In this document: positions 34,501 to 64,000 of the stretch, piece by piece | Layout of the letters: every line of letters starts with the position of its first letter | Position numbering within the stretch: position 1 is the first letter of the stretch | DNA from: Fimbriosthenelais zetlandica | Taxonomy: Eukaryota | DNA length: 64,000 bases | Assembly: GCA_977030845.1 (NCBI GenBank) | Contig: OZ365113.1 | Coordinates: 38,936,001 to 39,000,000 of the forward strand | Reading direction: 5' to 3' | Notes under the pieces: generated by a model | The model's database searches: none | Told to the model about the DNA's origin: nothing | The model's input: only the letters and a program-made list of their open reading frames with translations | Made by a program: the position numbers and the translations under genes

Positions 34501-37500
34501 CATCTCAACATTATGTACTGATTGAAAAGTCTATAGTCTGGACTATCAGTGCTCGGGCAAGGGGTCATCTTCAGAAATTGGAGTTTTGGACTTGGTATAT
34601 GAAGTATCTGTCATATTAACAAATTTGAGATTTTGATGTAATGCTCGCCTTTGGCTTGTCACCTTGTTTTGTGTTGTACTTAGGTAAAAGGTGATGTGGA
34701 TGAGTACCTACTTACACACCAGTAGACTGTGATGTATACTAAAAGATCCCCTTTCCATTTACCTTACATTTAAGTGCCTTTTAACATATTTCTGGCTTCC
34801 AAACAAACACTAAGCAATAAAGGAGTCCTGGGTGGGCAAGATTTGACACAAGTGGAAAGATATGATACCATGAATACAATATAGCTAACCTAGTAGTGAG
34901 CCTTTGCTACCCAACACGCAATTGTTGCCTTGTGACCAACATTACAAGTGACAAAATACAGCAAGGTTGAGTTCACATTTCCATCCTTGAATTATATTTG
35001 CTTCAGTTTTATCATATGGGTCAGTTGACACAATACTAATTATGTTATGGCATGCATTGCCCTGGTACCATTGCTAATGCTTATGAAATATGCATCATTC
35101 CCAGTTGACCTACCCCTTAAAAGCCCCGAATCACTTCACAGCCCAATTTTTTTTCATCCCTAGGCATTTGTGATTTAGTACAGGATCAAATGGATCTTTA
35201 GAAACGCTGGCAATGTCTGGACAGTTAAATCGTCCAGAGGTGACCAGCTCATTTCTTGAAAAACAAGTTTTGCAAAGATTGTTTGGCATGAGTAAAAATA
35301 GAGTGCAAAATTGGTGTGTTTTGTGGATTTTGGTGAATTTTTCCATTCTTCTCTTGGTGAGACGTATCATCCCTTTACAATTCAGATTTCTTGAAATATT
35401 TTGATTCTTTTTCCTCTCTGGATTCTTTTACCCTTTATTACTTTAATTCAAACTGGATTTTTAAGAGAGATTGAAATATTTTGTAGATTTTATTGCAAAA
35501 AAAATGGTTCATTCTTCCTCTGTTATTTTCTGACTGGATACAATGCCTCTATGTACGGAGACCTGTGTTAGGAATATCTTAGGTTACAAAATGGATTGCT
35601 ACCCGCCCTCCTCTTGCTGGAGGCAATGGTCAGCGCCATAAGAGGTCAATATTTGGTCAACATCAATTTTGCCCTGTTCACTGCTGATTGGTGATGGTAG
35701 TAAGCCCATTGACCAATCGAGGCACTGAACTGACCATTCCTCGCTGACTACAAGGGCAGAAGTAATGGCCAGTTTTCTGGGCTATTAACCCTGCATAGCT
35801 TGGACATTTCGAGGTTGACCGCATCTGTGTCGCCCTAGCTTACAACTCCTTCTACTTACACTGCTCCCCTGTGGCTTAGCTGAGAACTAAGTATGGGAAA
35901 GCATTCTAATTTGAGTGGACACTTCACGGTGAGTTGTAAAGAGCAGTTGAGACTATAGCCTCCCACCTAAGGGCTCTAAAACTGAAACCACTGGAAGTTT
36001 TTTTAAACTCACAGCATATACAGTGGCATTAAGATTTCACGAACTAGGCTCTAGTGACTCGTTGAACGATGGTTCCCACCTTTGATGCCCCTTTTTCAAG
36101 TACATTTTCCCCTTAATGTGAGGGTCTTTCGAGATTTGCAGCTTTCCTGTTTTACACGTTTTCAAATACTCGCCATATCTCAAAATTCAGTTGGTTGAAT
36201 GGCCTTTCCTGCTATCTACTGTAAAGGAGGAAATGAAAGTAATCCAGTAATCCAGTCATGTGAAGCCTTCCACCCATAATATGGTGAAGGAAATTTGCAA
36301 CACATAATTTCAGAGTTCCTCACTAATTTCCCAGTGCCCAAAATACATCCCTAATATAGGGCTTCCTCTGGAGATTAAACTACAGCCAAAATTTGTTTAG
36401 AATCATTATGTCCTTTCTTGGTCTTAACAATCTGCCCCAAACATTGACGACTAGCTTTTGTACGACCTCCCAGGACAACCTAGCCCAAAAGTGCTCCCTA
36501 CCTTGCATGATGGAGAACTGGTTCTGGTAAAGAACAAAATTCCAAATTTCTTCCAAACTTGGCACATTCTTCTCCTCACAATAGTCCCTGGTGTTGAACC
36601 TTTAACTAGATCCATTCTGCCCTTTCCTCCATTGCCCTTCCCCCTGGTGGCCAATGCTCGTACTTCCACTTTAACCCACCATGCCGCCTAGTTGTTTAAA
36701 CTAGAGGCACGGTTGTCTAACGCATCATTTGCTGTTCCCTTCCATTCCCCTGCGTGCTTCCTAGGGATTAACTGGCGAACTGAAACATATGAAACCCAAA
36801 AGATTGACATATATGATTGTAGAACAAGAGGATGGTAAGCACACTTAATTCATAAACAACACATTGAAAGGTTATGAAAGTAAGTAACAATTTCAGTGGT
36901 ATTATTTTTCTTTCTCTTTGGTTTCTTAAATCTGATTTCTGTTCACATCGCCAAAGTCAAAATCCCAAAATATTGATCAAACTTGTTAAACCAAATTACA
37001 ATCATGTATACATCTAGTGTTTGGATCCTAGTTGACTAGTACCTACCATAGACTAAGCTACTACCATTATCTTAAGTAACTCATCGATTACATTAAGTTT
37101 TTATTGATTCTAAGGAATTTCTGCATGTTATATTATTCCATGATAATAATTATAAAACTTCATGTATAAAGTATGTATACGAATTTAAATTAAGATATGT
37201 TTTAATGAAAGTTCTCGATAATCTCTTTCATAATAACTATACTGAAGTAATCTATCCTGTTGATGTTGTGAATTTTCTCTGTTTGATATGTTCATGGTGT
37301 TTTGGGATTTTTATTGAGAATAAGATGTTTGGATTTGACCAGGTATATTCAAGCAGCCACCTCACCCAAGGACATCATCATCTTACTGGATGCTAGCGGC
37401 AGTATGACAGGACTGCGTATGGAGATTGCCAAAGCTACAGTAGAAAAGATCCTCGACACACTCAGCGATGATGATTTTTTCAATATTATTAAGGTACAGA

Positions 37501-40500
37501 CCATCAAAGTTATCAATCAATAACTTAGATGTTCGAGCCAACCATCTCTGAAAGCTTGTTTTCATTGTAGTTTCCTAATATATATTATGAAAGAAGATAT
37601 CTTTCATTCAGAATTGACCAACGCATTAACAGAATCTTTTTCCTTTAATGCAGTTTTCCGAAGATGCCGAATATGTTGATGAGTGCTTCAATGGGACATT
37701 GGTTCAGGCAAACGCCGACAACAAAAAGGTGATAACCATTCATGACTTAATCCTATATAAGAGGGTGTGTACAATGTCACTATAATATAAGAGGGTGTGT
37801 ACAATGTCACTATAATAATGTTGAATAAAACATATTATATATGCTATGTAACTAGTAAAATGTAATAATGAACATCACTATACATACAATATATTTGGAC
37901 CTACAAATTTAATTGTTTTTTCTATTTTTCTTCAGCGCCTTAAAGAGGCAATCGGTCATGTCCGAACACAAAATATAGCTGCATTTGACAGGGCGTTGGT
38001 TGCTGCCTTTGAACTGCTTAGAGAGGTAATTTATTCTTTTCCCGCTCATTTATTACTGTTCATTTACATTTTATTATTTTGAGTTAATTATATTTCTCCC
38101 CATCCCGTATGAATTCAGATTAACAATAGTGACAATAGAATCAAACAGAACAAAGCTCCTTTTATCGAGGATGTATTTAAAGGGAACAAATATTTGCTTT
38201 TTTGACTTTACAAGATTGGTATATTGACTCGCTGAATGATAATTTTAATGTCCTTATATAAAGCTCTAATGGGGCTCATTATAAGCAGAACATTGCATCA
38301 GTGTACCACATGTTTTGTTGGGAATGAGTGATGACAAATGAATTTGATCTAGTAATCGCCCTATCCCAAGGCGATGAAGAAGCTACCTTTGATAGTTTTG
38401 CTTGCATCCTTCAAGCTCGCTAAAGACCTCACACTCTGCCTTGTCTACTATATACAATGCATTTTGATATTAGATTACTTTGATCGAAAGGAAAGGGAAT
38501 GATTAAATCCAGTGGACGTTAAGTGTGGCTTGAGGGAAAACCCTAAAAACCACTTGCATTATGAGAATGATCTACGCCTGATACTTACAATATTGACATA
38601 TTTCTAGTGCCCAACGTTCTCCCCCTATGAAATGAGGGTAATGTTGACCGAGACGAAAAACCTTAATGGCAGCCACATTGTAGGGAATGCCTGCACCCTT
38701 AGTGTACATTCAGGATGGATATTGATCAAGCACAGATCTATATTCTCGCAGATCCACTTCAAGTCACATGAAAGAGCTTGAAAAGCATACTGCCTTTTGC
38801 TGCATGCCAAAACATTATGGTTGCCCTTGAAGCCCTCCGTCCCTAAACATGCCATTGCTTTGAAATGAGAGAAAACATGTGCCAGGGTCCTGGAAACATG
38901 TCCGATACCTCTTCTTGTGTGAATTATCATAACATTTAGGGCCGAGGTCATCCATATAGGACCCTCTATATGCCTTGTAAGACATCTCCCCTCCACATGC
39001 AATATGGCATGTTCACATCTTGTTTTTGGTACTCCTTAATTTTCCTGAACAATTGCCAGTCCATTTAGACCCTGAAAAATACCCTGACAGACCTCACACA
39101 GCGGACGACAGCACCTTCCACGCCAAATTTTCATGGATAGACCACTTCAGTAGGATTTTGGGAAACACTAGAAGTAGTCATGTTTTCCTTTAGATTAGTT
39201 AGCATTAGAGCGAAGACGGAAACATCACTCATTGTACTAAACATGTGGTTCTTTATCCAAAGAATGAACTCTTTCTCCATTGATATTATTACCACACTTT
39301 TCTTTTTCGGTTTCTAAGACAACTTCTATTTCATAGCTTCAGCTTAAATAAAAGCATTGATAAATTCTGCATGTTGCAACTACTCATGAATTCTCTAGAT
39401 ATTTCCTACTTTACTTTCTTTAAGGAAAATGTCCTTTTGTGGAACTTGGCTTTTGATTGGGATTATAAGGAGATTGTAGGAAAAAGATAATGTGAAGTGA
39501 AATTATTTCATGCCAATATAATGTTTGAAAGTGAAAAAATCTGAGAGAATATTTTTCCATTGATTTCGTCCTAGTACATACTGAGACGTGGAGATGATCC
39601 AGATGCAGAGATATGATCTCCGTATGCAGAATGACCAAATTTACAACTGAACATAAATTTAGAACATGCAGTTGTATACCCATTTGTCTGAAGACATCAT
39701 CAACATTGAAGTCTCTTTCATTTTAAATACTGTTATATTTATTTTAATTTTAAATGTGATTATTCTTGATCCGTTTAGATGAATCGTACCAAGACTGGAA
39801 CCTTGTGCAACAGAGCAATCATGTTGATCACAGATGGCGCTCCAGAAACTTATGAAGATATCTTCAGACGGTACAACTGGCCCGGCAAAAGGGTAAGTAA
39901 AGTTTTTACAAAAGAGAATTTTCAATACATTTAATTCTGTATAAGTCGTTTTCCATCCACTGTTTCAAGCCCCATATGGACCGGTCAGAGTTAGTTTGCT
40001 GTCAGAGTTAGTGACGTAGGCGAGGGGAGTTAGAAAACGGTGGACATGCACATGAGTCCTCAATTACATGTATGTGTAATATACAACATTTTCTTTATTT
40101 TATCAGGTTCGAGTTTTCACGTACCTCATAGGGCGAGAAGTAGGCGACTCCAAGCAGGTCAAATGGATGGCATGTGCTAATAAAGGTGAATTGTCCATAC
40201 ATTTCCTTATTAACATTTACTACAAAGACATCCATATAACAAAAATATCTATGGAATGGATTAGAATGGACACAAGATACAAACTGAACAAAATACTCTT
40301 TATTTAATCACTGTTCCGTATTAAATTACAGTGCTGCCCCCTGCCTATATCCGTATTGGCTTTATGATAGTTCTGAAATCTCAGCTAATTACAGCGCCCT
40401 AATTACATAACCAACCCCCGACTCCAACCCCCTTTAACCGGCCACTCCTGGCCCCTACTACACTACTCAATGCTACAACTATTTCTGACAAATTTTCAGG

Positions 40501-43500
40501 TTTTTACTCACATATCAGCACTCTAGCCGACGTTCAGGAAAAAGTGCAGGTACGTTTCCTTCTGTTTTATAAATGATTGTAGGCTCACAGTTAATGGCAA
40601 CATTTTGGATATTTTAGAGGATATTGTAACATAATATTGATTACAACTGTTGCAATATATGTCAATTCTCACAATTTTCACACATATAAAAGTTACCTAT
40701 ACCTCAGTGAACTATTTTCAGTAATGAATATAAATAATAACCCATTTTAACTTGAACATTCCTCGTTTAAACCTATCATATACTATCAGTCCTTAATTCT
40801 CTACATGCAGCTTTCCAGAAAGGGCTTTCATTTTAATTGTTGCCTTTCAGTTTTCAACCATGTTCAGTTTTCAGGTATTCATTTTACCGAAATATATTTC
40901 CTCTTAGGTTTTCAGCCAGGTATTTGGTCCCTCAAAAATTGTCCTTTCCATTTGATCGAAAGGAAAAATTGGTCCTCATTGGATTACCTGTGAAATTTAT
41001 CATCTCATAATTACATATTGGGCTTCCTATTGACCAAAATACAAGAAATCTCAACATTTAAGTGCAGTAAATTATATAAAACGATGTTATGAAATTTCAT
41101 TAAAAACAAAAACTCATGTGCTTCAATACATATAGTCGTGATACTCATGAGCTTAACTTGATGTTGATTCCCAATTTCATGTGATATTACTTCAGAACCT
41201 GTCCTTCTCTCACAACCTTGACATGTGTGCCCTTTGCCCTATGCCCTTTCTAGGAGTACATCCATGTTCTCAGCAGACCGATGGTCATAGATCGTGAATA
41301 CACAACCACATGGACAAGTGTTTATGTCGATGAGGCGGTAGGTTCCTCAACAACAACCCCAAATCCTCTGTGGCCATTCGTGTGTGTCGTGCTATACATA
41401 GCCATACAAAGCTTCATTTTGCCCACTTCTGTGTTTTCTCCTTCTTGTACAGTTGTTCGACAAGCTGTTTTGTGTGTGTCGTACTGCAAACTGGTGATGA
41501 TGTGCCTTGCCTACACTCGTAACATCATCACTCTCTGTGATGTTACTCTTGAAGAATACAGCAGGCACAGATCTTTGTCCTTTGTACAAAATTGTCATTA
41601 AGTGTCACCGATTTTCAACTTTTACTGCTTTTTATCCCTTGTTAAGAATGCCTAGAATACATATTTTGAAATGACACCTTCACGATGCAATTATAAAATA
41701 CCTTAAGTAAAAAACGTATATAAAAGCACCAAAATATTTATGCTACATCTCGGGTAATATTTTGACGTTGAAGTATTGATCTATTCGCTTGATTACGTAA
41801 ATGAAAACAGCATTCTCTGAAGGAGTCATTTCCCTAGGAAATTCTTGAATTGATCAACTTTTTATTCATTATACATATATGTGCTATCTGTGTATTTTTC
41901 TCGTACAAAATGTTTGAATGTCATGAACCAAACACAGGCCTTATCTATGTTAACTGATACAGTGGTACTACCTCAAAGGACGATGGTTCATGACATTGAC
42001 AAACCTTTTCTTTTGTAACCTTTGAGTCACCTCTATATAGAAGCAGTCAACCACCTTTTTTAATCTCTGTGCTTTTCTTTCCTCACCGTTCTGCATGACT
42101 TTCAGAACTATGTAAAAGTGGTAAGCAGGCCTATGGTCATTGCCAAGCCAAATAAGACCATATGGACACCGGTTTATATGTCTGCCGCCTCAGTAGAGGA
42201 TATCAATCAGGTTTGTTGGAGTAAAGGGGACATGTCAAAGAAATCTGGGCTTACGGATGTTCACATCTCTGGGGCCTTAAATCTCTTCTTACTTGGTTTC
42301 TTCCTCAATAGCAAAACAATCTCTTACTACCCGTTATTTTTTCAGCCTCCCTTGGTTTGAAAAAATTATAACCTGATAATCTGAGTTTTAGGAGATTTTA
42401 TGTATGACTTCCTTCGTGCTACCACTATATTAATAGAAGGTGGATTGAATTGTTAGTTTTAGTAATATCCTGGGTGCTGATGGATCTTTCACTATAACAC
42501 CCATCCTTCCATCTATGGCCATTACGATGCACTAAATACCTGTGACAACCATAACCCAATTTTGACAGTTATATTTTTTGACCCCTGACAGATGACCTTC
42601 AACTGATTCAAATATTTCTTTCTCTCGTTCACACTTTGGATTGTATTTCCTGTCATATTAGATGGCAGATTAGACTTCCAACTGACCTATTTCTAAACAC
42701 CAGTGTTGAACTTTTGGTTTTCAGTCATATATTGCAATATTCAGTCCCCCATTGAGTGTCCTTAGTCCACTTGAAACTGACAGATGGTCAAATACCATCG
42801 AGCCTGACCCTCGACAATCTGTGGTAAGCGATCGCCGTGATATCAGACGATGGAACAACAGAACTGCATTATCAATGTTCACCATCAATATCCCTCATCA
42901 CTTTCTATTTTGCTTGTTTTAGGTCATGTAGATATTCTTAGCATCTTCCAAAAGTTTTGGATCTTAAATATTTTCTGCCAGTTTAGGCTCTTGATCAGAA
43001 TTGCAATAAGCCTGACATTTTCAGTGGATCTTCCTTTTTCATACTGATACTTTGGAACAAGTGCAGATGATCATTAAATTTTAGATTTCTTTTCTTTATA
43101 TTCTCTACAAAGGTTTACGAGCAATTTCCTGCATTTGTACTGTCTGTTAAATCATCATAGCCATGCAAATCGGATAACGTTCGATGACATTTTGAATACC
43201 GTTTTCTTAAAAGAACATTTGTACATATTACGTTTGGGAAGAGAATGTGAATTATTCCATATTTGGATATCATATAAGCATTTGAAAATTGATTTACAGT
43301 AAAGTAACTTGATCTTTCTAATGGAAAATGACCTTTCAAAGCCTGGTCACCATGGCAACGCTAAAAAAATGATATCCTGAACAATTGTCATTCTGAATCT
43401 GAATCTATCAGGCTAATTTAGAGCAAAGTCTCCATGCCAGGTTCTTAGACAATATTTAGATGATAATGATATCTCCTTGGGTACAGCAATTATTGTCCAC

Positions 43501-55500: not shown

Positions 55501-58500
55501 TCTGGTAAATGCTCCTGCACATGACAAATACAAACTTTTCTGCAAGCATTCTCATAATTAGCATATTCAATCAATTGTCATATAATTAGCATATTCAATC
55601 AATTGTCATATAATTAGCATATTCAATCAATTTGAAATGAAACATAAAGTTATGTTCACATCTAGTGCCTTCACATGAAAATCTAAAACGTGTATTACTG
55701 GAAAAATATAATCAATTATTGTAGAAATTTCTGCTACTCTTATATTTAGAGAAACAGAATTCCAATAAATTCTTCGAGCAATTATTAAAGTCATGTAAAG
55801 AAACCAATTTTTGCGTTAAAGATAAAACATAAGCTAGATAGCCTAATTTACACATCTTCACTGAATGATAGATTATGTGGCATTTACCACAATCTTGAGC
55901 ATGTATATAGGAACAGAAGTCTTCTTCAACCAAACTGACATCAGAGAAACGGTAGGTCAGGCTAACAATACCTGTAGTATAATACCTACACACGAGCTGA
56001 GGGCAGTGTGAGTTAATGGCTGAGAAACATCTTATTATCAACTGTATAGATACAGAGGTAATGTCATGTCGTAACACTGCTGTCAACGAACCAAGTCTTC
56101 CCTCGTTTTATAAGGGAACCTACATGTATTCACATTCCTAATACATCCCTTCATATCTGGGAGGGGAATTAACATTTTATTGTTTATTATTTTTTATTTG
56201 CTTAAGGAAAGGGAGTGTACTGCACAATTTCTGGCATGTCCAGGGGGCTTTGCATGTTTGTTATATGTAGAGGGTTCTTAAAACTCCCGTAATTATCACT
56301 TAAGAAATGAGGCACCATAGACTTCAAATAGCCATAAGTATGGTCGATTGTAAAGTAAGTATTGGGATCTAGAATTCCAACTGACTACTTAAACCAAGTC
56401 TTGTCCCTGTGAGTGTGTAATACATGGTAATGTGTATCAAGTGACAGTAGATCAGAAGTGATGATCTGATGATCAAATAACGTGCATGTCATACCCTGTA
56501 CTAGTCAATTACCAGTTCACTTTTGATAAATCCATGTGGTGATTCGTTTTCCTGTATGTGACTGTTCCGATACATTCAGCATTTTTTCTCATTCAGCTGT
56601 CATTTTTACATTTCAGAACACTAAAGAAACTTTTAATTCGAAAAATTAAAATTTTTGAAGGCATGAAAGTTTATTCGGCATGGGGAAAATTTGTACTAAT
56701 CGGATGTACTATTCTTTCTGGCTTAGAGAACTTCATGAAATATGCTTGTAGAGAATGTTTCATACTCCTTACATGGTATTTTATATTTTTTTCCTTTTCA
56801 GAAACGGTATTGAACTGGTCTTCCTCGGAACGAAGGGTGGTTTAACGCGATACCGTTATTTGGTGGAGAATGCCACTGATCCGTACGTCATCTTTCACTG
56901 ATTATTCTCCCATTTTAAAAATGTTTACATTATTATTATTTCTTTTCATATTGTTTCGATTCAGTTTGCTTTGTCCACCCCTTCCTTCATTTGCCCTGAC
57001 TGACCCTGCTCATAGTTCTAAAGGTATAATAGGTATATATAATACTTCGGATATCATTACAGCTCATTCATAGACAACAATGTGAATACCATTCAAGAGC
57101 TCTATTATAAACGTGCTGTAGAAGGAGGGGAGAGTGTATTCACATTTTCTGTGCCTTTCAATGCTGGTAAGTCATACAAGATTAAGTTATTACACGTTTT
57201 CATATAATATCCAATTGCCTATAATATTGTATTTTTATAACAAAAACAATAATCCATAACGATCTTGCTTTGGTGATTATTTGATTCAAAAACTATTTCA
57301 GGGGAGGAATTTATGTGGAATAATACAGTCGTCACTGCCAGTTCACCTATCACTATACAAGAGGATGGCAGGGAAGCTGTCGCAGCGGTAGTCGGCCTAC
57401 AAATGTCCTACGACAAATTCTATGAATTCTTCATCAACCAAACTCGAATTTGTCCATCCAAAGATGCTCCTTGTAACCTTACATGTGAAAGCCCAGTACG
57501 TTCTCAGCAACTATCATCAGATACAAATAATCAGTTATTTGTTCATTAATTAGTTTTTTCGAAAACTCTTCACATTAAAAATGATTTTTCCGTGTCCTTT
57601 TAGGCTCTAGACTGTTATCTCTTAGACAACAATGGATTCGTGGTCCTCTCGGAGAACAGAGCTGAGGTAAGTTTCTTCAAACCCTATATTCTATGATCAT
57701 TGATGTTAATTAATATGTTATATAACATGATTTCAAAAGTAAATGTCTTTTGATTAATCGGAATGAACACTTTTTTTTGCAGATTGGAAAGTTCTTTGGT
57801 GGTCTAGATGCAACACTTATGAAAGAACTTATCCAAAATGAGGGCTCAGACAAAGGAGTATTTAAAAGGTACGGTAATTCTTTCTATATCCTTATACACT
57901 GAAGGTTTCCTGCAACTTGTCCAACAACGCATTTTAACCAAATTTCTGCTTTCAGAGTTCAAATGCATGATTTCCAAGGAATGTGTGAGATCTGGGAGAG
58001 AGGTGGATCGGGGGCCAGCTCTCTCTTTATAAATGTAAGTATATCAACCTTGACAAGTTTTGATCTTTTATAACTAATTTAAACATGAAGGAAATCTTCC
58101 AGTATTTGAGAATTACTTGTTTTGATAATTGCCTTCATTTTTACAGCCTTTGAAAAAACTTTTCTCGTCACTGTCTTGGATTGTGCAAGAGATCGCCCTG
58201 TAAGTATAATATAATTATGTGATTTCGATCTTAGTATTTAATATTATATGTATAATATAGGAATATAAAATAATCTAAATCCTTAAAGATTTGTTGTTTT
58301 TGATTGCAGATAGACTCCTTGAAAATAAAAATAATAATGATTTGCAATTTGTCATTGAGGATAATGCTTTTTTGCCTGTACCCATTGAAGAACGCCATTT
58401 TTCTCTTGTAGATTTCTGGTGCAGTTCAATCTATTTAGCTGGTGGAATAGTGGCTACATGACTGTGCGAGGTAAGTCTTCCTTTCAACTTCCTAACAGGT

Positions 58501-59981
58501 TGATTCGATTTCTGACAAATAGTACACTTGAAACTTTATGGAAAAGTAAATTTTCTCCAACATGAAAAGAACATTCTCTTTTCTTAACAGAATCACATTA
58601 CACTCATTCAAAGATGCCATTTGTCATGATATTTCATGATTTCGTTTTTGTCCGTATTGAATCATTTCTCACACATTTTTTGTTATCAACAACACATTTA
58701 CACATGACACATGTTGGTGTCCATACTTGAATCAATGGTCCAAAACACCTTTTCTAAACTATTTTAAACCTGGTTGTCTTCAGCTTCGGCTGTACAAGAT
58801 AGTCCAGCAATGGCAGTAGAATATATTAATGATAGATTTAAGGACTCTAATGCCTTACTTCAAGCCATTCCATTGTACCCATGTACTTTTGCTTACTACC
58901 TTCCTGGGAAGTTTCTTGAAGGAAGTAAATAATTGTGGAATGTTGATTGGCCTGCTGCGGCACAAATGTCCAGCTTATTTTTCCGCATTGAATAAATACT
59001 TAGAATTGATTGGCTGGTGATCTGGAGGTCTATAGGCTCAGCATTTGACTCCTCTATGGGATAATAAGGCATTGTTATCAAGTCCTCCGAGGAATATTAG
59101 TGAGATTAAGGCCATTTCCCTCAAGATGAAATTCTCCTGATGATGTAGTCTACTTAAATGGCATCTCTGCACTCATTGAAAACATGTCAATTTTACAGGA
59201 ATATGACATATGCATGTACCATTTATTCAGTTCACATATATTTTCTCATTACAATTACTTATATTTTCCTCACACCCCATATAATATTTTGATTGGTTCT
59301 TTAGATTCGTTGACTGTTTTCATTGGTTTCTGTCACCAACGTTGATATCCTCAAATTTCCAAAACTATAATCTCAAAGTACCTATATATATATTGATTCC
59401 TACCCATACCAAATGAGAAGAATGCTGTGTGCACCTCATGATACAATATAAACAATAGTTCGCTGTTGGTTCCAAGTCATGGGGAACAACTATTGTTCAA
59501 TCTTGAGTGGAAAACCTACTGTCACCAGGACTCTCTCTGGTCTGCTTTGCCTTCCGTTCCAAAGTTCTGTGTTGTTATTTTCCTTACATGTGAAGCTTTT
59601 TGACATTTATTCACTCCTATTGGAATTCAAATTACATTCAAAGTTGAATATATTCCACCTTACTCCTCACTGTAACAAGTGTACATTCACATATAAATAT
59701 AGTTCTAGTCCTTCTTTGTCCTCCAATGCCAAAGGAGTCAAACAACTCAAACACTACACATACTGTACAATCATACATTTTGATCAATGCTTTGAAAACG
59801 TGGAACACCACATAGGAGTTGGATAAATGCTGTTACCGCCATTTGAAAACAAACCCTGCTCCGAATGAAAATGGCATGAATAGAAGCATACTTCTTGGGA
59901 GATATTGCATTCATTGTGTGTCCACTTGAACTGATGACAATTGACCCCTAATCACCACCTCTCAACTGTAAGTGTTCCACA

Positions 59982-60017
<36 letters not shown>

Positions 60018-63000
60018 CTCTCTCTTGTTATCTTTCTCACCTCTCTAAGATTACTACCCTGCATGGAGAACAGCATCAAGGATATCTTGAATTGGTTTTT
60101 GTCATCTTTGGAAGGCCTGTGATTTCATTCATTTATTCAATGCCTCATTTAATTTCCCCCCGAATATTGGATGATAGGAATGAAAGCCTGCTACCTGGAC
60201 TCAGGCTCTAGCTTCTGCTCTCCCCCCGCCCCCCTCCCCGACCAAAATAAAATCAAATCTGACATTATGTGTTTAATTCCGGTTCAAAACGCATCTCTCT
60301 CTCACCTCAGCCATGTTGTGATCCCTTTTTGATGGGGCCTCCATCTCATAATCATTATTCTTGAGGACAATTATGGAACATCAAATGTTTGATTTTGTGT
60401 TTGTCACGTATCTCATCCATATGTGTCTTGCAACTAGATTCATTTGTCATTTGCTTGGAGTTCTGGTCCACGTTGTTCCTTATCGTCTTTACCCCACCTG
60501 TCTCGTGTGACATGACATCAAGTGTCCCCAGTACTGCTAGCTTTTTGTAACCCTGCGTGTCTATGTTACTTTGTATATAGCAGCAGAAAAGTATCGCAGA
60601 GGCCCGGTAATTCTTACATGTGATAAGACACAATTACTGCATTGGTCGAATTGCCTTAGGCCAAACACCACTACACTTTTACTCCAAGACCGAATCATGA
60701 CATGTAATCTTTCTTGTGAAAAGTAAGTTTAATATTATTCTCCCTGGACATGGATTCATGGTGATGGGCTGGTGATGGACAAATCCTTCATTTCTTACCT
60801 TTATTTTTTTGGGCCTTTTTCTCATGGCAAAAAGTAGTAGAGCTAACTGTTTTGATGTAGATTGTAGATGGCCAGAAGTTTACCTTTCATTTAATGATTT
60901 GAAAAAGATGAAAGAACAAAGATTATTGGTAATATTGTATCAAGTTTGTCTAGTGGTATGTAGCATTCAATTGGTGGCTATTTTAGTGTGGTTTTTGTAT
61001 GATGTAAATTGTGAAAATTGGCTGGTAGATGTATTGATTGATGTTCCCTAGCCCAAAATACAAAGACTGGTACTTCCATTTTGAATAAACCTGTTCTGTC
61101 TGACAGAGCTAGAGCTTTGGGAACAACAATCACTGATTCAGTGATTCAGTGAGCTTTTAAATGTTCATTTTTTAAATTTTGATGTCCATACTATATATGA
61201 GGCTATTTTGGGGGTGACTTCCGATAGACTTGAAACAACTACTTATGGCTGATACTTTATTTCAAGCAATTCCATTGTAGCCATGTGCTTTTAGTTTCGT
61301 ATATTATTGAGGAGTTCCTGAGAATTTCCTGTTTCTGCCTGATGTTGAAACAGGAATTTTATGAAGGCAGTAAATAATAGCAGAATGCTGATTGGCCCTT
61401 GTTGGTGACATGATTGTATACAACTCTCATGAGTGAAATAATTATCGGCTTCTGGTCTGGAAGCACATGGGCTGAGCAATTGACTTGTCCTTCGAGGATG
61501 TTTATTGAGATAAAGGCCATTTATTCACGTTTGTTGGGGGGATTTCTGAAAGTGAAAAAATCCTGAATTCTTAGTCTCCTCTTGTGACATCTCTGGATCC
61601 CCTATAAGCTATTGTAATCCCTTCTTTTTACCCTTGTAATATTGTACATCAATATATAGCACACTGCCACTATTCTAGCTAAGTCTTCCTTCCCATCCCA
61701 TCCCATTTGCCATGAGTTACGGCACCTTACTGCCTCTTCAGGCACAGTCATCCATCCTGAGCTTGAAGTCCTTGTCACTGGGGCTACTGGTGGCTACTAT
61801 GATCACACTGATGGTGGAGAGGACAGAAGAAAAGACAAGAATCCAGATGATGTCTCCATCACTGTTGAGGAAGAAGGTGAGGGAGGCGGTGATGGGGACA
61901 TTAATGAATACCAATATGACGAAGAGGAGGAAACTCAGAACTATCCGTGGCTTGACACAGTTGGGGTCCTTCTTCGCAACATGGACCGGAAAGAGAAGCG
62001 TAATTTCATGAAGGAATACTACAACCTTGTCAGACAGGATCGAAGTGATGAATTCATCCAAATCTGGCTGGATAAGAAAGTCCGACGGTATGGACCTAAG
62101 CTTATTGGACATCGTACTTGTCGGCGAGATTTTGGACTCTTCCTTTTAGCAGAACCTCACCGCCACCAGCAGTGGAATGGCTCACGTGACTGCCCTGAGA
62201 ATAAGTGTAAAAAGTGAGTAACCCCGCTGCAACACACATAACCAGTGCAGTCAACTTACCAAAATACCTTATTTCCCCGTCCTGTCCAACACCACAAAAT
62301 ATTCCGTGGCATCAGTTATGAGAAATGTTTTCTTTCTTAATTCAGAGTTCCTGGATGAAATTCATCTTATTCTTATTTTATATATATATACATATCTCAT
62401 GAGTCATTGTCATTTCTGTCCTTGTCCTGTACATATTTATTTAATTCTCAATGGTATTGATATTGCCATGCAAGAATGAATGCATTTTACAAGCCTTTTT
62501 CAATATTTTCTTGATCAAACTCAAGCATGTTGATCTGACTTAAATCAATATCTTTCACGCTTGTGGTCACGTTCTTCATTGTGATTGAATGAGGTCATGA
62601 CATTATCTGCTTACAGCAACCAATTAAAATAACATGATAAACGACATGCTAAAAGGGCTAGCAAGAACGGGTAGAAGGAAACTTTTTTAAGAAGCTTTAG
62701 TTTAAAATGTTTTTTGTAATGGGAGATTTGTCCATCTATTTCTGAGTAAGGATAGGCCAAAATAATAATGCAGTTAATTCAATTGACTGAGTTTCAGATC
62801 ACAGCATATTCTTAAAATCCAATAGCATGGCTAAGAAAGATAATCATGAAGTAAAGTGGTGCAATGGGCCTAATGCATTTGGAGCATTTTGCCAACCAGA
62901 AAAAGGGGCCATGTTCCTCGAGTACATGGCCTCGACGTGACTGATGCCCCCTCCCTACAAACATGTACATATTACTATGCACACCTGCCGCCTCCTTGCG

Positions 63001-63988
63001 TTACCCCTGTCAGCTTGAATGAGACCCTCTCGGTCCAAAATAACACAATTAACCCAGATAAGCCCTATGTTGGTATGCCGACTCCCTTTTGAGTTAAATT
63101 GAACCATTTTTAATGTATTTTTAGTTTCAATGCTAAGAATCCCAAAATTGCCATTGGACCCGGCCATGGCATTTTTATTTTTGATGACGGTCGCCATGGG
63201 TAGTATGTCTGAGCAGGAAGGATTATCCAAGACAGTATAAATATTTTAGTTTTACTTGTTCATTCAGTTTTGAACCCACAATAATCTTTACCTCATTTTG
63301 GTGAGACTAGATGAAAGTCAAAAATCCCGTTTAGCCACTGAGGTCGAAAAAAGAGTGAGGAATTCCTGAAAGTTTAATTACATATACCGGCACACTGATC
63401 ATAATTATCACATAAAAGCTGTGAATTTTACATTATGTCTTCAAGAATTACTCTGGGAATGCTATGCATATCAAAATTGACTTATGCCATTATTTATACT
63501 GTGTTGGTATCCCTCCTGGAAGGAAGACTGGGTTTTCCTTTATCAACCATGAGCCACCAATCCTCCTTGACTTATCTGGGTTATGAAAACAACGAAAACA
63601 TTGAACATAATCACTATATTATTTTCCGGCATTATCTTGAGCCTCTCAACAATATGTGCTTGGCAGGCGACAACAACCAATCTGAGACTGAGGAGATGCA
63701 AATTGGCTCTGAACCAGTCTTTGAATCAGACTACTATGTTCCTGATTTTGATGAGTTGAGCAAGTACGTGAATGACGATGAAGTTCGACGGCGAGTAAAT
63801 GAGTGGCGGGAGATGCAAATGAAGAATTCCCCAATGCTAGAAATCAAGTTATGGTTTGACAAGGTGATGAAACGGTCTGGGCCACAAATAACAGGACATG
63901 AGGAGTGCTTTAAAACATACCCCCTCTTCGCTTCTGCAAACTTCTCCTTTTTCTCTGGAACCCTTGAAGGTTGCGAGGCGTGTTATAA
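1478..63988 (+). CDS. CACNA2D3: Voltage-dependent calcium channel subunit alpha2delta (alpha2delta-3/4-like), multi-exon gene, 5' and 3' partial
   Basis: Hand-spliced exons give an in-frame protein with family motifs: [120 protein letters not shown]. The MIDAS Thr position is Ala (NIAAF), non-canonical as in alpha2delta-3/4. The symbol means clade similarity, not proven orthology. First exon(s) and the GPI-signal exon lie outside the window. Confidence 0.95.
10936..11061. mobile_element. Fold-back / MITE-like palindromic element
   Basis: Nested inverted repeats tagaccctttgttggtt/aaccaacaaagggtcta, cccgtctagtgcgt/acgcactagacggg, atatactc/gagtatat. Confidence 0.7.
14300..15300 (-). mobile_element. 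Degraded non-LTR retrotransposon (CR1/L2-like) ORF2 remnant
   Basis: Minus-strand translation LKPIK.NAPSE...[12 protein letters not shown]...LVHKG...RN resembles the pre-RT region; many stops; boundaries approximate. Confidence 0.3.
16149..16222. mobile_element. Mini MITE, PIF/Harbinger-like termini
   Basis: ccagggcccgtttcag ... ctgaaacaggtccctgg with internal cttagcattgctaat; second copy at 45876. Confidence 0.5.
19140..19500 (-). mobile_element. Degraded LINE RT remnant
   Basis: [13 protein letters not shown] resembles RT motif GVPQGSVLGPLLF; frameshifted; approximate. Confidence 0.28.
20985..21044 (+). CDS. CACNA2D3: alpha2delta exon, phase 0-0 ([20 protein letters not shown])
   Basis: tttttttccag|...cag|gtaaca; matches RLVEAAEEAHLKHEF; follows a 19.4-kb intron. 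Confidence 0.88.
22925..22985. repeat. Tandem repeat, 21-bp unit x ~2.9
   Basis: atgtaaaagcaccacatagtc repeated. Confidence 0.9.
24781..24950 (-). mobile_element. CR1/L2-type LINE ORF2 C-terminus
   Basis: Minus strand reads [50 protein letters not shown], the typical ORF2 tail (RT...WN.LP..IR.....FK). Confidence 0.72.
25165..25450 (+). mobile_element. LINE reverse-transcriptase fragment
   Basis: [20 protein letters not shown] matches the non-LTR RT motif D(L/F)xKAFDxVxHxxL. Confidence 0.68.
27158..27287 (+). CDS. CACNA2D3: alpha2delta exon, phase 0-1 (KDYPKAKK...[23 protein letters not shown])
   Basis: tttacag|...t|gtgagt; HFN..PVN...S.V.VPTN.Y motif. Confidence 0.92.
31896..32289. repeat. 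Minisatellite, 31-bp unit x ~12.7
   Basis: atatacaagtaac(t/c)at(c/g)actgacaccatgtg, head-to-tail with no spacers. Confidence 0.97.
32288..32392 (+). repeat. 37-bp tandem triplication containing the 3' splice site
   Basis: gattgatttctttgccttttccag|cttctca(ccatgt) starting at 32288, 32325 and 32362. Confidence 0.95.
32386..32517 (+). CDS. CACNA2D3: alpha2delta exon, phase 1-1 ([14 protein letters not shown]...[16 protein letters not shown])
   Basis: Third of three identical acceptors and the only one in frame; donor g|gtaaa. Confidence 0.93.
36765..36834 (+). CDS. CACNA2D3: alpha2delta exon, phase 1-2 ([24 protein letters not shown])
   Basis: cttcctag|...tg|gtaagc; Cache YxxxxRxW motif. Confidence 0.92.
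37343..37493 (+). CDS. CACNA2D3: alpha2delta exon, phase 2-0, start of VWA domain with MIDAS DASGS
   Basis: [50 protein letters not shown]; ccag|...aag|gtacag. Confidence 0.95.
37654..37728 (+). CDS. CACNA2D3: alpha2delta exon, phase 0-0 ([25 protein letters not shown])
   Basis: gcag|...aag|gtgata; C.NGTLVQA motif. Confidence 0.93.
37756..37815. repeat. Tandem duplication, 30-bp unit x2
   Basis: tataagagggtgtgtacaatgtcactataa twice. Confidence 0.9.
37936..38025 (+). CDS. CACNA2D3: alpha2delta exon, phase 0-0 ([30 protein letters not shown])
   Basis: ttcttcag|...gag|gtaatt; VWA helix. Confidence 0.9.
38620..39000 (-). mobile_element. RTE-clade-like LINE 3' remnant
   Basis: GHVSR...G...CDLK...ID resembles the RTE ORF tail WLGHVxRM...KxDLK...ID. 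Confidence 0.35.
39779..39892 (+). CDS. CACNA2D3: alpha2delta exon, phase 0-0 ([38 protein letters not shown])
   Basis: tttag|...agg|gtaagt; [12 protein letters not shown]. Confidence 0.94.
40107..40185 (+). CDS. CACNA2D3: alpha2delta exon, phase 0-1 ([27 protein letters not shown])
   Basis: ttatcag|...g|gtgaat. Confidence 0.94.
40500..40549 (+). CDS. CACNA2D3: alpha2delta exon, phase 1-0 ([17 protein letters not shown])
   Basis: ttttcag|...cag|gtacgt; ISTLADVQE motif. Confidence 0.93.
41254..41337 (+). CDS. CACNA2D3: Alternative exon variant A, phase 0-0 ([28 protein letters not shown])
   Basis: ctttctag|...gcg|gtaggt; closest to vertebrate [26 protein letters not shown]. Confidence 0.92.
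42106..42210 (+). CDS. CACNA2D3: Alternative exon variant B, phase 0-0 ([35 protein letters not shown])
   Basis: actttcag|...cag|gtttgt; 14/28 aa identical to variant A; 105 nt, no stop. Confidence 0.82.
42725..42823 (+). CDS. CACNA2D3: Alternative exon variant C, phase 0-0 ([33 protein letters not shown])
   Basis: cttttggttttcag|...gtg|gtaagc; 99 nt, open; keeps Y2, I3, S7, P9, T18 and W (+1) of A/B; more diverged. Confidence 0.62.
44749..44766 (+). CDS. CACNA2D3: Candidate 18-nt microexon, phase 0-0 (HDAGTQ)
   Basis: cttctcctcgcatatttacag|catgatgctggcacccag|gtaatt; upstream ctaac branch-like motif; variable linker position. Confidence 0.55.
45876..45947. mobile_element. Mini MITE, same family as 16149-16222
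   Basis: ccaggagcctgtttcaaaa ... ttttgaagcgggcccttg; internal cttagcattgctaat. Confidence 0.5.
46459..46515 (+). CDS. CACNA2D3: alpha2delta exon, phase 0-0 ([19 protein letters not shown])
   Basis: atttcag|...act|gtaagt; matches LMTTVAMPVFSKQNET. Confidence 0.92.
47220..47300 (+). CDS. CACNA2D3: alpha2delta exon, phase 0-0 ([27 protein letters not shown])
   Basis: ccaacag|...aag|gtaagt. Confidence 0.93.
47411..47485 (+). CDS. CACNA2D3: alpha2delta exon, phase 0-0 ([25 protein letters not shown])
   Basis: tttcag|...acg|gtaaga. Confidence 0.94.
48012..48038 (+). CDS. CACNA2D3: Candidate 27-nt microexon, phase 0-0 (WNGANASTQ)
   Basis: Long pyrimidine tract ...tgtgtcgacag|...cag|gtacaa; in frame. 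Confidence 0.5.
49588..49662 (+). CDS. CACNA2D3: alpha2delta exon, phase 0-0 ([25 protein letters not shown])
   Basis: tttacag|...gag|gtaaag; KPNY.SVDL.EVE. Confidence 0.93.
50025..50051 (+). CDS. CACNA2D3: Candidate 27-nt microexon, phase 0-0 (ASNYSIYDE)
   Basis: ttgtttgattccag|...gag|gtatat; donor only moderate. Confidence 0.4.
51335..51373 (+). CDS. CACNA2D3: 39-nt exon, phase 0-0 ([13 protein letters not shown])
   Basis: cttttcattgcctttttctag|...gag|gtgagt; strong splice sites, in frame. Confidence 0.7.
51487..51558 (+). CDS. CACNA2D3: alpha2delta exon, phase 0-0 ([24 protein letters not shown])
   Basis: cacacag|...atg|gtaggc; LRN.M...TG motif. Confidence 0.9.
51655..51716 (+). CDS. 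CACNA2D3: alpha2delta exon, phase 0-2 ([21 protein letters not shown])
   Basis: ctctttccag|...ag|gtaaat. Confidence 0.92.
51895..51968 (+). CDS. CACNA2D3: alpha2delta exon, phase 2-1 ([24 protein letters not shown])
   Basis: ttacttcag|...g|gtaagt. Confidence 0.9.
52183..52225 (+). CDS. CACNA2D3: alpha2delta exon, phase 1-2 ([15 protein letters not shown])
   Basis: cctttcag|...tg|gtgagt. Confidence 0.88.
52352..52458 (+). CDS. CACNA2D3: alpha2delta exon, phase 2-1 ([35 protein letters not shown])
   Basis: cttctag|...t|gtgagc; W.YC...C pattern. Confidence 0.88.
52736..52850 (+). CDS. CACNA2D3: alpha2delta exon, phase 1-2 ([38 protein letters not shown])
   Basis: cttaccag|...ag|gtaaag; CD.ELI..+L.DA. 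Confidence 0.92.
54230..54277 (+). CDS. CACNA2D3: Candidate 48-nt cassette exon, phase 2-2 ([16 protein letters not shown])
   Basis: tactaat branch-like motif, pyrimidine tract, gcacag|...aag|gtaacg; phase matches flanking exons, no stop. Confidence 0.5.
55553..55632. repeat. Tandem repeat, 28-bp unit x ~2.8
   Basis: ataattagcatattcaatcaattgtcat repeated. Confidence 0.9.
56802..56882 (+). CDS. CACNA2D3: alpha2delta exon, phase 2-2 ([27 protein letters not shown])
   Basis: ccttttcag|...cc|gtacgt; matches GVEVAFLGTRTGLSR. Confidence 0.92.
57063..57166 (+). CDS. CACNA2D3: alpha2delta exon, phase 2-1 ([34 protein letters not shown])
   Basis: cattacag|...g|gtaagt; L.Y.RA...F..S+PF. Confidence 0.9.
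57302..57495 (+). CDS. CACNA2D3: alpha2delta exon, phase 1-0 ([17 protein letters not shown]...AAVVGLQM...CNLTCESP)
   Basis: atttcag|...cca|gtacgt. Confidence 0.92.
57604..57666 (+). CDS. CACNA2D3: alpha2delta exon, phase 0-0 ([21 protein letters not shown])
   Basis: ccttttag|...gag|gtaagt. Confidence 0.94.
57783..57868 (+). CDS. CACNA2D3: alpha2delta exon, phase 0-2 ([29 protein letters not shown])
   Basis: tttttgcag|...ag|gtacgg. Confidence 0.92.
57956..58034 (+). CDS. CACNA2D3: alpha2delta exon, phase 2-0 ([26 protein letters not shown])
   Basis: gctttcag|...aat|gtaagt; D+Q.MC motif. Confidence 0.92.
58147..58199 (+). CDS. CACNA2D3: alpha2delta exon, phase 0-2 ([18 protein letters not shown])
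   Basis: tttacag|...ct|gtaagt. Confidence 0.9.
58412..58470 (+). CDS. CACNA2D3: alpha2delta exon, phase 2-1 ([19 protein letters not shown]), end of alpha2 chain
   Basis: ctcttgtag|...g|gtaagt; matches FLVEFNLCSWWHSDMTA. Confidence 0.93.
58831..59117 (+). repeat. Diverged direct duplicate, copy 1 (copy 2 at 61223-61522)
   Basis: Shared blocks 27/30 (58861 vs 61263) and 30/35 (58918 vs 61363), plus a ...gagat.aaggccattt end. Confidence 0.8.
59984..60015. repeat. (CT)n microsatellite
   Basis: about 16 CT units. Confidence 0.9.
60581..60722 (+). CDS. CACNA2D3: Alternative delta exon variant a, phase 1-2 ([48 protein letters not shown])
   Basis: tatatag|cagcag...aa|gtaagt; 142 nt, open; RRGP..TC...CxxxCEK pattern like variants b and c. 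Confidence 0.72.
61223..61522 (+). repeat. Diverged direct duplicate, copy 2
   Basis: See copy 1 at 58831-59117. Confidence 0.8.
61742..62213 (+). CDS. CACNA2D3: Alternative delta exon variant b, phase 1-2, long acidic insert (...[19 protein letters not shown]...DCPENKCK)
   Basis: gcctcttcag|...aa|gtgagt; 472 nt, open, GC-elevated. Confidence 0.85.
62900..63072 (+). CDS. Candidate exon, phase 2-1 ([10 protein letters not shown]...[17 protein letters not shown]...KPYV)
   Basis: ttttgccaaccag|...g|gtatgc; only the phase-2 frame is open; GC-elevated; weak homology. Confidence 0.3.
63667..63988 (+). CDS. CACNA2D3: Alternative delta exon variant c, phase 1-2 (...[26 protein letters not shown]...GCEACYK)
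   Basis: gcttggcag|...aa|gtgagt; 322 nt, open; 12/29 identical to variant b in the core. Confidence 0.87.
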
Positions 63989-64000
63989 GTGAGTACATCT

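What the first reader, a model, noticed from the sequence alone, without database searches (positions are those of the whole stretch)
60581..63988. Three tandem homologous phase 1-2 exons encoding interchangeable N-termini of the delta chain
Seen: exons of 142, 472 and 322 nt (about 47, 157 and 107 aa), all entering in phase 1 and leaving at C-x-K|gt in phase 2, sharing an RRxGP...C...CxxCxK scaffold. The b and c cores are 12/29 identical (IxxWxDKxxxRxGPxxxGHxxCxxxxxLF). Direct a-b or b-c joins, or skipping all three, would shift the frame, so NMD can enforce exclusivity. They follow ...[11 protein letters not shown] directly. Established (from memory): the alpha2/delta proteolytic site lies here (LEAVEM in alpha2delta-1, MTAKAQ in alpha2delta-3), cleavage is needed for channel activation, and alpha2delta proteins also act in synaptic organisation. 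Inference: splicing changes the cleavage-site context and adds 0, ~60 or ~110 extra extracellular residues. I do not recall such an array in characterised alpha2delta genes. The window ends 12 nt after c, so more variants may follow.
Basis: partly seen in the sequence, partly recalled or inferred. Interest (0 to 1): 0.9.

Follow-up and report, generated by a model that had tools for sequence, protein, structure and literature searches.

The report
Swappable exon set in calcium-channel helper gene
An invertebrate (probably annelid) gene for the alpha2delta helper subunit of calcium channels carries a row of alternative versions of one exon, kept intact in at least five related genomes. It can therefore probably make several proteins that differ exactly where the alpha2 and delta halves meet, though no RNA data could be obtained to show this.

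Summary
Exons a (60581-60722), b (61742-62213) and c (63667-63988) are open, have AG/GT borders, enter in phase 1 and leave in phase 2. Each length is 1 mod 3.

The host gene is an alpha2delta gene: VWA_N scores above Pfam's cut-off, a DASGS MIDAS motif is present, and VGCC_alpha2 gives weak matches in the expected order.

Four related genomes carry the array in the same place. L002, L004 and L005 show a-b-c plus a fourth copy d; L006 shows c and d. A fifth locus, L001, covers only c. The array lies between the same two constant exons, whose phases fit only one inserted copy. Any two copies joined give a stop within 6 codons.

The copies evolve fast (dN 0.5-0.76 against 0.07-0.09 for neighbouring exons) but keep their frame, splice sites and cysteine scaffold. 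For c, dN/dS is 0.35.

Copies b and c (and d) add an acidic linker and a confidently modelled helical hairpin of about 55 residues. This hairpin matches no Pfam, PDB or AlphaFold DB entry.

In otherwise unalignable introns, two conserved islands flank exon b and are perfectly complementary over 12 nt. Their flanks change in a compensating way between species.

No transcript evidence could be obtained. The effect on alpha2/delta cleavage is untested. I read this as a probably real, apparently undescribed mutually exclusive exon array.

The parts
58411..58470 (+). Constant exon upstream of the array (...[19 protein letters not shown]). Its donor leaves 1 nt (phase 1).
   Evidence: The orthologue in L002 at 7197-7250 is 83% identical in protein. 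Orthologues are also seen in L004, L005 and L006.
60581..60722 (+). Variant exon a: the short, canonical form (47 codons) with the cysteine scaffold of the delta N-terminus.
   Evidence: The L002 orthologue at 9105-9240 has the same phases and 36% identity. a-like exons are present in L004 and L005.
60771..60795 (+). Conserved intronic island el1, 49 nt after the donor of exon a. Core GATGGACAAATC at 60774-60785.
   Evidence: A 15-mer is identical to L002 9295-9309 at the same relative position; 0 of 300 shuffles reach 15. It is complementary to el2.
61742..62213 (+). Variant exon b (157 codons): long acidic linker, helical module and cysteine scaffold.
   Evidence: The L002 orthologue at 10104-10566 has the same phases. 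It matches the module HMM at E=7e-26.
62717..62736 (+). Conserved intronic island el2 in the b-c intron. Core GATTTGTCCATC at 62725-62736, the reverse complement of the el1 core.
   Evidence: 20 nt are identical to L001 605-624, the only conserved island of that intron. The 12-mer is identical in L002 at 11102-11113. Duplex energies: window -22.9, L002 -35.8 kcal/mol against shuffles of -14 to -16.
63667..63988 (+). Variant exon c (107 codons): short acidic linker, YYVPDF helical hairpin and cysteine scaffold.
   Evidence: Orthologues: L001 (64% aa, 76% nt; dN/dS 0.35), L002, L004, L005, L006. In the AF2 model, residues 21-75 have pLDDT above 93.
63652..63666 (+). Conserved 3' splice-site region of exon c (atatgtgcttggcag).
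   Evidence: The same 13 nt (atgtgcttggcag) lie upstream of c in the window, L001 and L002.

Best explanation
The window holds three of four alternative versions (a, b, c) of one exon of an alpha2delta calcium-channel auxiliary-subunit gene. The fourth version, d, should lie just past base 64000.

The exon encodes the stretch that in vertebrate alpha2delta-1 follows the alpha2/delta cleavage site. This stretch is the first ~35 residues of delta, with its first three cysteines.

The constant exon before the array leaves 1 nt. The constant exon after it (K|SYSIHRVxKTNLMLL..., seen in relatives) supplies 1 nt. Every variant has a length of 1 mod 3. So only an mRNA carrying exactly one variant is translatable, and two variants give a stop within 6 codons. 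Exclusivity is therefore enforced at least by the reading frame and NMD.

Version a gives the short form, like the vertebrate protein. Versions b and c (and d) place an acidic linker and a helix-loop-helix module of about 55 residues in front of the same cysteine scaffold. The protein thus gains a different extracellular appendage at the alpha2/delta junction.

A conserved RNA duplex joins an island 49 nt downstream of exon a to an island in the b-c intron. It would loop out exon b, and I take it as part of the choice mechanism, by analogy with srp and Dscam.

Shown: the anatomy, homology, phases, conservation across five related loci, purifying selection, and the complementary islands.
Inferred: one-at-a-time use in vivo, the effect of the duplex, and any effect on cleavage, channel function or partner binding.
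For: - Exon anatomy and frames.
- Host gene identity: VWA_N scores 66.5 and 36.9 bits, above the 34.7 cut-off, and a DASGS MIDAS exon is present. VGCC_alpha2 matches profile positions 146-200 and 217-247 in the window and 355-383 on the exon downstream of the array in L002 and L006. The PDB alpha2delta-1 alignment covers 859-888, with [11 protein letters not shown] at 973.
- Same order a-b-c-d between the same constant exons in L002, L004 and L005, and c-d in L006. All L002 exon lengths are 1 mod 3. The downstream acceptor is phase 2 in three species.
- Copies group by position, not by species: the d copies of L002 and L004 join at 100/99 support, as do the b copies of the window and L002.
- Selection: synonymous sites are saturated against L002, yet the 150-codon frame of b is intact. 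For c against L001, dN/dS is 0.35.
- The module is a conserved family: 31 representatives at E<=1e-3, with W, P, G and two C invariant or nearly so.
- Complementary conserved islands with compensating flank changes.
- A second conserved stem, X/Y, lies in the c-d intron of four relatives.
Against: - No transcript or junction evidence. Two searches of the 90%-clustered protein collection found only genomic single-exon ORFs.
- All 31 hits in the 1.84-billion representative library are short ORF calls. No annotated full-length alpha2delta carries the module.
- The variant exons evolve 6-10 times faster than their neighbours.
- The duplex loops out only b and leaves exon a exposed, so its logic does not map cleanly onto the docking/selector scheme. 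Cross-pairings that would show competition are no better than shuffles.
- The 12-nt complement taken alone, within one species, is not rare: about 16% of shuffles reach it.
Confidence: 0.75

Rival explanations
1. Only exon a is used. b, c and d are leftover duplicates (pseudo-exons) without function.
For: No RNA evidence was found. No annotated full-length protein contains the module. The copies diverge fast.
Against: - Frames of 100-157 codons, splice sites and phases are intact in five loci whose synonymous sites are saturated.
- dN/dS for c is 0.35.
- Copies cluster by type across species.
- Core residues are invariant.
- The acceptor of c and the intronic islands are conserved.
Confidence: 0.07
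2. b, c and d are poison exons. They are included together with a to create a premature stop and lower alpha2delta output (regulated unproductive splicing).
For: a+b and a+c joins stop within 6 codons. The el1:el2 duplex brings the donor of a close to c.
Against: A poison exon needs no protein-level conservation. Here the in-frame translation is conserved as a domain family, with a confident fold and the same cysteine scaffold as a.
Confidence: 0.07
3. b and c are co-included as a tandem domain repeat through a bridging exon (62900-63072).
For: 62900-63072 has AG/GT borders, is open in the required frame, and has the required length of 2 mod 3.
Against: It has no counterpart in the b-c intron of L001, L002, L004 or L005. 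In the closest relative, the only conserved island of that intron is el2. Co-inclusion would also duplicate the cysteine scaffold, which pairs with a single downstream strand.
Confidence: 0.03
4. The exons are mutually exclusive, but the inserted linker and hairpin end up on the C-terminal tail of alpha2, not on delta. In this reading cleavage happens after the hairpin, for example at the basic pair before G-P, 6-10 residues ahead of the first delta cysteine.
For: A basic pair followed by x-G-P lies just before the first cysteine in a, b and c, and in about 23 of 37 aligned copies. Vertebrate cleavage lies about 16 residues before the equivalent cysteine.
Against: The basic pair is not invariant. 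In the model it closes the last helix, a poor substrate position. Vertebrate cleavage is not at a dibasic site and is attributed to ADAM17 (title of PMC9016415, listed). No cleavage data exist for this protein.
Confidence: 0.2

Closest known systems
Alternative splicing of vertebrate alpha2delta-1 (regions A, B, C)
   Same: Same gene family. Splicing varies extracellular loops of the auxiliary subunit, with functional consequences such as gabapentin affinity (PMC3988960; PMC9901441).
   Different: [quoted passage not shown] None is a mutually exclusive array and none lies at the alpha2/delta junction. My literature searches found no description of an exon array here.
Mutually exclusive exon clusters controlled by intronic RNA pairing (Drosophila srp, Dscam1, 14-3-3xi)
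   Same: Tandem homologous exons. Deeply conserved intronic islands that are complementary and would loop out a variant exon. In srp, an upstream pairing that loops out exon 4.1 directs use of 4.2 (PMC4691838).
   Different: Competition of several selectors for one docking site was not found here; cross-pairings are no better than shuffles. The upstream island lies after variant a, not after the constant exon. The animal is not an arthropod. No mutational test exists.
Mutually exclusive exon pairs in calcium-channel alpha1 subunits (CaV1.2 e21/22, CaV2.2 e37a/b, Drosophila cacophony)
   Same: Same channel complex. One-of-several exon choice tunes channel properties (PMC5059693, PMC3916075 and PMC11828482, listed).
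   Different: Those are pairs in the pore-forming subunit and the two exons are of nearly equal length. Here the array is in the auxiliary subunit and the variants differ by 60-110 residues, because three of them carry an extra module.
Proteolytic alpha2/delta maturation site (LEA//VEM in alpha2delta-1, MTAKAQ region in alpha2delta-3)
   Same: Same position in the protein, by order and spacing: about 100 residues after the FFGxxD motif and just before the first delta cysteine.
   Different: There is no sequence similarity to either vertebrate site, and cleavage of this protein is unknown.

Membership tests
[quoted passage not shown] | VWA_N domain (PF08399) | tested here: met
   Two exon ORFs (27128-27385 and 32364-32573) score 36.9 and 66.5 bits; the cut-off is 34.7.
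[quoted passage not shown] | VWA domain with a complete MIDAS motif (DxSxS) | tested here: inconclusive
   A single exon scores 22.2 bits against the 23.8 cut-off. The motif DASGS is read directly in 37287-37520.
[quoted passage not shown] | VGCC_alpha2 region (PF08473), in the expected order | tested here: inconclusive
   Single-exon scores of 13.6-17.9 bits are below the 22-bit cut-off. Their profile positions are in order: 146-200 and 217-247 in the window, and 355-383 after the array in L002 and L006. The PDB alpha2delta-1 alignment has E=0.2.
[quoted passage not shown] | Delta part with conserved cysteines and a C-terminal hydrophobic or GPI signal | tested here: inconclusive
   The first three cysteines lie in a, b and c. 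The next delta exons (TNLMLLAVDxQCYC and IYRKRPxEC) were seen only in relatives. The C-terminus was not reached.
[quoted passage not shown] | Proteolytic cleavage into disulfide-linked alpha2 and delta | not testable with these tools
   This needs protein biochemistry.
mutually exclusive exon (MXE) cluster | Tandem homologous exons with identical entry and exit phases | tested here: met
mutually exclusive exon (MXE) cluster | Inclusion of none, or of more than one, breaks the reading frame | tested here: met
   All lengths are 1 mod 3. Stops follow 5-6 codons after any double join. The downstream acceptor is phase 2 in three relatives.
mutually exclusive exon (MXE) cluster | Each copy is maintained by selection across species | tested here: met
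mutually exclusive exon (MXE) cluster | Mature mRNAs contain exactly one copy | not testable with these tools
   No transcript-derived sequence was found.
docking-site/selector RNA-pairing control of MXE (Dscam, srp type) | Conserved complementary intronic elements around variant exons | tested here: met
   el1/el2 in the window, L002 and L001 (L001 has el2 only), with compensating flank changes. X/Y in four relatives.
docking-site/selector RNA-pairing control of MXE (Dscam, srp type) | Competing, mutually exclusive pairings (several selectors for one docking site) | tested here: not met
   In L002, el1:X scores -21.6 against shuffles of -15.7 +/- 3.2. el2:Y, el1:Y and el2:X are no better than shuffles.
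docking-site/selector RNA-pairing control of MXE (Dscam, srp type) | Disruptive and compensatory mutations change exon choice | not testable with these tools
   This needs minigene experiments.

The most novel reading that the evidence does not exclude
A lineage of invertebrates (annelid-like worms, perhaps wider) uses a four-way, RNA-structure-assisted exon switch at the alpha2/delta junction. The switch equips one alpha2delta gene with either the plain junction or one of three different versions of a previously undescribed helical-hairpin domain. Together with the second exon cluster in the Cache region of the same gene, this would give a combinatorial set of channel and synapse-organiser isoforms from one locus, in place of the four paralogues that vertebrates use.
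Probability: 0.45. Interest if true: 0.75.

Novelty: new variant of a known kind. Interest (0 to 1): 0.62.

Why it matters
Alpha2delta proteins set calcium-channel surface density, need cleavage at this junction to activate channels (PMC5092059), organise synapses, and are the gabapentinoid targets.

An evolutionarily maintained switch that swaps the junction and adds a folded module there would be a natural experiment on what the junction does. It would show a route to alpha2delta diversity other than gene duplication.

It would also extend RNA-pairing-associated exon arrays, known mainly from arthropods, to another phylum. The paired islands el1/el2 and X/Y are short, well defined and directly testable in minigenes.

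Tried and rejected
- **Family and fold searches.** Sequence searches of a, b and c against PDB and Pfam gave only chance hits. The ESM Atlas gave nothing above its noise level. Foldseek of the c model against AlphaFold DB clusters and PDB gave no match with E below 1.
- **Transcript evidence.** I looked for ORFs that join exons. Searches with the b and c ORFs, and with the 37-sequence profile, returned only genomic single-exon ORFs. Cluster look-up gave no names. Two contig look-ups returned no DNA.
- **Bridging exon 62900-63072.** It is open but unconserved, so I rejected it.
- **Competing-pairing model among el1, el2, X and Y.** Not supported. Long-window duplex folding in L004 was uninformative.
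- **First guess at the downstream delta exon.** A vertebrate-like motif search found nothing. The exon was then found by cross-species ORF comparison.
- **Dibasic site as the cleavage site.** The basic pair is present in only about 23 of 37 copies, so I kept this only as a low-probability rival.
- **350-nt intronic repeat (58780-59180 and 61200-61600).** It is not conserved in L002, so it is probably a dispersed element rather than a splicing signal.
- **Organism of GCA_013332975.1.** Not found in the paper library.
Full report
**Observation.** The three exons are in the sequence as described. Exon a (60581-60722, 142 nt), b (61742-62213, 472 nt) and c (63667-63988, 322 nt) are open. Each has an AG acceptor and a GTAAGT or GTGAGT donor. 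They follow the exon that ends ...[11 protein letters not shown] at 58470 and leaves one base. Each variant starts with two bases that complete that codon, and each ends with two bases of a split codon after a two-cysteine motif.

b and c are clearly homologous: BLASTP finds 13/32 identical residues, E=3e-9 for the pair. a shares only the last 42-46 residues, namely a basic pair, G-P, a first cysteine, then C-x(2-4)-C-x-K. A pattern scan for open frames ending in such a cysteine motif at a phase-2 donor finds exactly these three exons in 58471-64000. pre1+a, pre1+b and pre1+c are each open. Every double or triple join runs into a stop 5-6 codons after the first junction.

**Host gene.** The + strand of the window carries an alpha2delta gene.
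- Two exon ORFs hit Pfam VWA_N above its cut-off (66.5 and 36.9 bits; cut-off 34.7).
- One exon carries the start of a VWA domain with a DASGS MIDAS motif.
- Exons at 57.3 kb and 57.8 kb match VGCC_alpha2 at profile positions 146-200 and 217-247. These are weak single-exon scores below the cut-off.
- The 57.8 kb exon aligns with solved alpha2delta-1 chains at residues 859-888 (QIGRFFGEIDPSLM; E=0.2, but twelve alpha2delta-1 sequences and nothing else).

**Position in the protein.** The same PDB output shows [21 protein letters not shown] at residues 973-993 of alpha2delta-1. That is about 100 residues after the FFGxxD motif. In the window, the first cysteine of exon a (TCDKTQLL...) also lies roughly 100 residues after FFGGLD, counting the intervening exons by eye.

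In relatives, the exon after the array reads K|SYSIHRVxKTNLMLLAVDxQCYC and matches VGCC_alpha2 positions 355-383.

The shared basic-x-G-P motif of the variants is not the vertebrate RYRKGP motif (recalled from memory). A separate exon with IYRKRPxEC lies further downstream in L002, L005 and L006.

**Related loci.** A profile of b+c was searched against 1.84 billion representative proteins. It found 31 hits at E<=1e-3, all 92-251 aa. All are single-exon ORF calls from unannotated contigs, and several begin with translated intron such as MCLAG. I fetched the DNA around some of them.
- L002, extended with L003 (ENA contig of 4.96 Mb): the orthologous gene has neighbouring constant exons 83-94% identical in protein. 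After the SWWN exon it has a (9105-9240), b (10104-10566), c (11484-11826) and a fourth copy d (14092-14386). Their lengths (136, 463, 343, 295 nt) are all 1 mod 3 and they have the same phases. The constant phase-2 exon follows 2.9 kb later, with no further copies.
- L004 and L005 (L005 is NCBI GCA_013332975.1): constant exons are 44-82% identical. Both show a, b, c, d in the same order.
- L006 shows c and d, followed by the constant exon.
- L001 is the closest relative (c 64% aa, 76% nt). It covers the end of b, all of c, and part of the c-d intron.

**Evolution.** In a tree of the module, copies group by position rather than by species. The d copies of L002 and L004 join at 100/99 support, the b copies of the window and L002 at 100/99, and the c copy of the window with L001's at 100/98. 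Deeper nodes are unresolved.

Against L002, synonymous sites are saturated in all exons (pS 0.74-0.87). Non-synonymous divergence is 0.07-0.09 in the constant exons but 0.76, 0.70 and 0.50 in a, b and c. For c against L001, dS=0.68, dN=0.24 and dN/dS=0.35. The variants thus evolve 6-10 times faster than their neighbours. They are still under purifying selection, and they keep frames of up to 157 codons, their splice sites and their phases at distances where introns no longer align.

**The added module.** An alignment of 37 copies shows a conserved pattern: (D/E)YY.PDF..L, a helix with W.NEWR.M, a second helix ending I..WF...K(R/K).(Y/H)GP.(I/L).G...C, then ...LF......G....C...C.K. One W and two C are invariant, and P and G nearly so.

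AlphaFold2 with this alignment gives a helix-loop-helix hairpin with a short capping helix (helices 27-30, 36-51, 56-70). pLDDT is 93-98 for residues 21-75. Confidence is low for the acidic N-terminus and for the cysteine scaffold, which in the full protein would pack against alpha2. There is no significant match in Pfam, PDB sequences, PDB folds, AlphaFold DB clusters or the ESM Atlas. As far as these libraries go, the module is an undescribed small domain.

**Intronic RNA elements.** Introns of the window and L002 do not align, apart from three islands:
- el1: 15 nt, 49 nt after the donor of exon a (window 60771-60785, matching L002 9295-9309). 0 of 300 shuffles reach a 15-mer.
- el2: in the b-c intron, core at window 62725-62736, matching L002 11102-11113. 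The 20 nt at window 62717-36 are identical to L001 605-624 and form the only conserved island of that intron.
- The acceptor region of c.

The el1 core GATGGACAAATC is the exact reverse complement of the el2 core. A 12-nt complement alone is not rare within one species (about 16% of shuffles). But here the conserved islands themselves are the complementary pair, at matching positions in two (el1) and three (el2) genomes.

The duplex continues past a 1x1 internal loop with different sequences in the two species. The window has TTCATT paired with AATGGG, and L002 has TTTAATTG paired with CAATTAAA. This includes two double compensatory changes. Duplex energies are -22.9 (window) and -35.8 kcal/mol (L002), against shuffles of about -14 to -16 +/- 3.

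A second pair lies in the c-d intron, outside the window: X (TTGCCTTATC) and Y (GATAAGGCA[A]). It is conserved in L001, L002, L004 and L005. X is also present in L006, where Y was not found. Its energies are -27 to -29 against -13 to -16 +/- 3. Cross-pairings between the two pairs are not better than shuffles.

**Mechanism.** I conclude that this is a mutually exclusive exon array. The frame arithmetic gives a built-in filter, because only one copy yields a protein.

The el1:el2 duplex would loop out exon b. In Drosophila srp, the equivalent upstream pairing loops out exon 4.1 and directs use of 4.2, as shown there by compensatory mutations (PMC4691838). By analogy, the duplex here should lower use of b and favour a more distal copy. 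This remains inference, and the position of el1 after variant a rather than after the constant exon is not explained.

At the protein level, a gives the plain junction. b, c and d insert 60-110 residues (acidic linker plus hairpin) directly before the first delta cysteine, which is where the vertebrate proteins are cleaved. Whether the insert alters cleavage, ends up on delta or on the tail of alpha2, or binds a partner cannot be decided here.

**Limits.** No spliced sequence was found in any accessible collection. No annotated full-length alpha2delta with the module was seen. This may reflect poor annotation of the lineages concerned or the limited reach of a two-sequence profile.

**Comparison and novelty.** Known alpha2delta-1 splicing involves two cassette exons and an alternative acceptor, all inside the Cache domains of alpha2 (PMC3988960; PMC9901441). 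My full-text searches found no description of an exon array at the alpha2/delta junction or of this module. Mutually exclusive arrays with conserved intronic pairing are well known in arthropods. I therefore class the finding as a new variant of a known kind.

I did not analyse it.

Noticed in passing
window 41254-42823: A second set of tandem, similar exon-like ORFs in the same gene, just after the VWA domain (..[22 protein letters not shown].. and ..[23 protein letters not shown]..). It is already noted by the scan as a separate finding. Together with the a-d array it would give combinatorial isoforms.
   Followed up: no
window 58780-59180 and 61200-61600: Two copies, in the same orientation, of an intronic element of about 350 nt. 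Blocks are about 83% identical, with indels. One copy lies 1.4 kb upstream of exon a and the other 150-500 nt upstream of exon b. There are no other copies in the window and no counterpart in L002, so it is probably a dispersed repeat.
   Followed up: partly
L001 1781-1803 / 2987-3033; L002 12454-12477 / 13881-13925; L004 11399 / 12234; L005 12517 / 13346: A conserved complementary pair, X (TTGCCTTATC) and Y (GATAAGGCA), inside the c-d intron of four relatives. Y lies 170-270 nt upstream of exon d. X alone is also present in L006 at 11467. The corresponding region of this genome lies beyond the window end.
   Followed up: yes
window 63652-63666 (and L001 1002-1015, L002 11469-11483): The 3' splice-site region of exon c is purine-interrupted (weak polypyrimidine tract). 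Its last 13 nt (atgtgcttggcag) are identical in three species, which suggests a regulated acceptor.
   Followed up: partly
window 60581-63988 compared with 57295-58470: The variant exons have non-synonymous divergence of 0.5-0.76 against L002, whereas the adjacent constant exons have 0.07-0.09. The alpha2/delta junction is a fast-evolving spot in an otherwise conserved protein.
   Followed up: yes
window 59985-60032: A (TC)n microsatellite of about 45 nt in the intron upstream of exon a.
   Followed up: no
L004 8882-9425: Exon b of this relative appears split over two frames. The contig is labelled as having about 1x coverage, so this is probably an assembly error rather than a broken exon. 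The related L005 has an intact b.
   Followed up: partly
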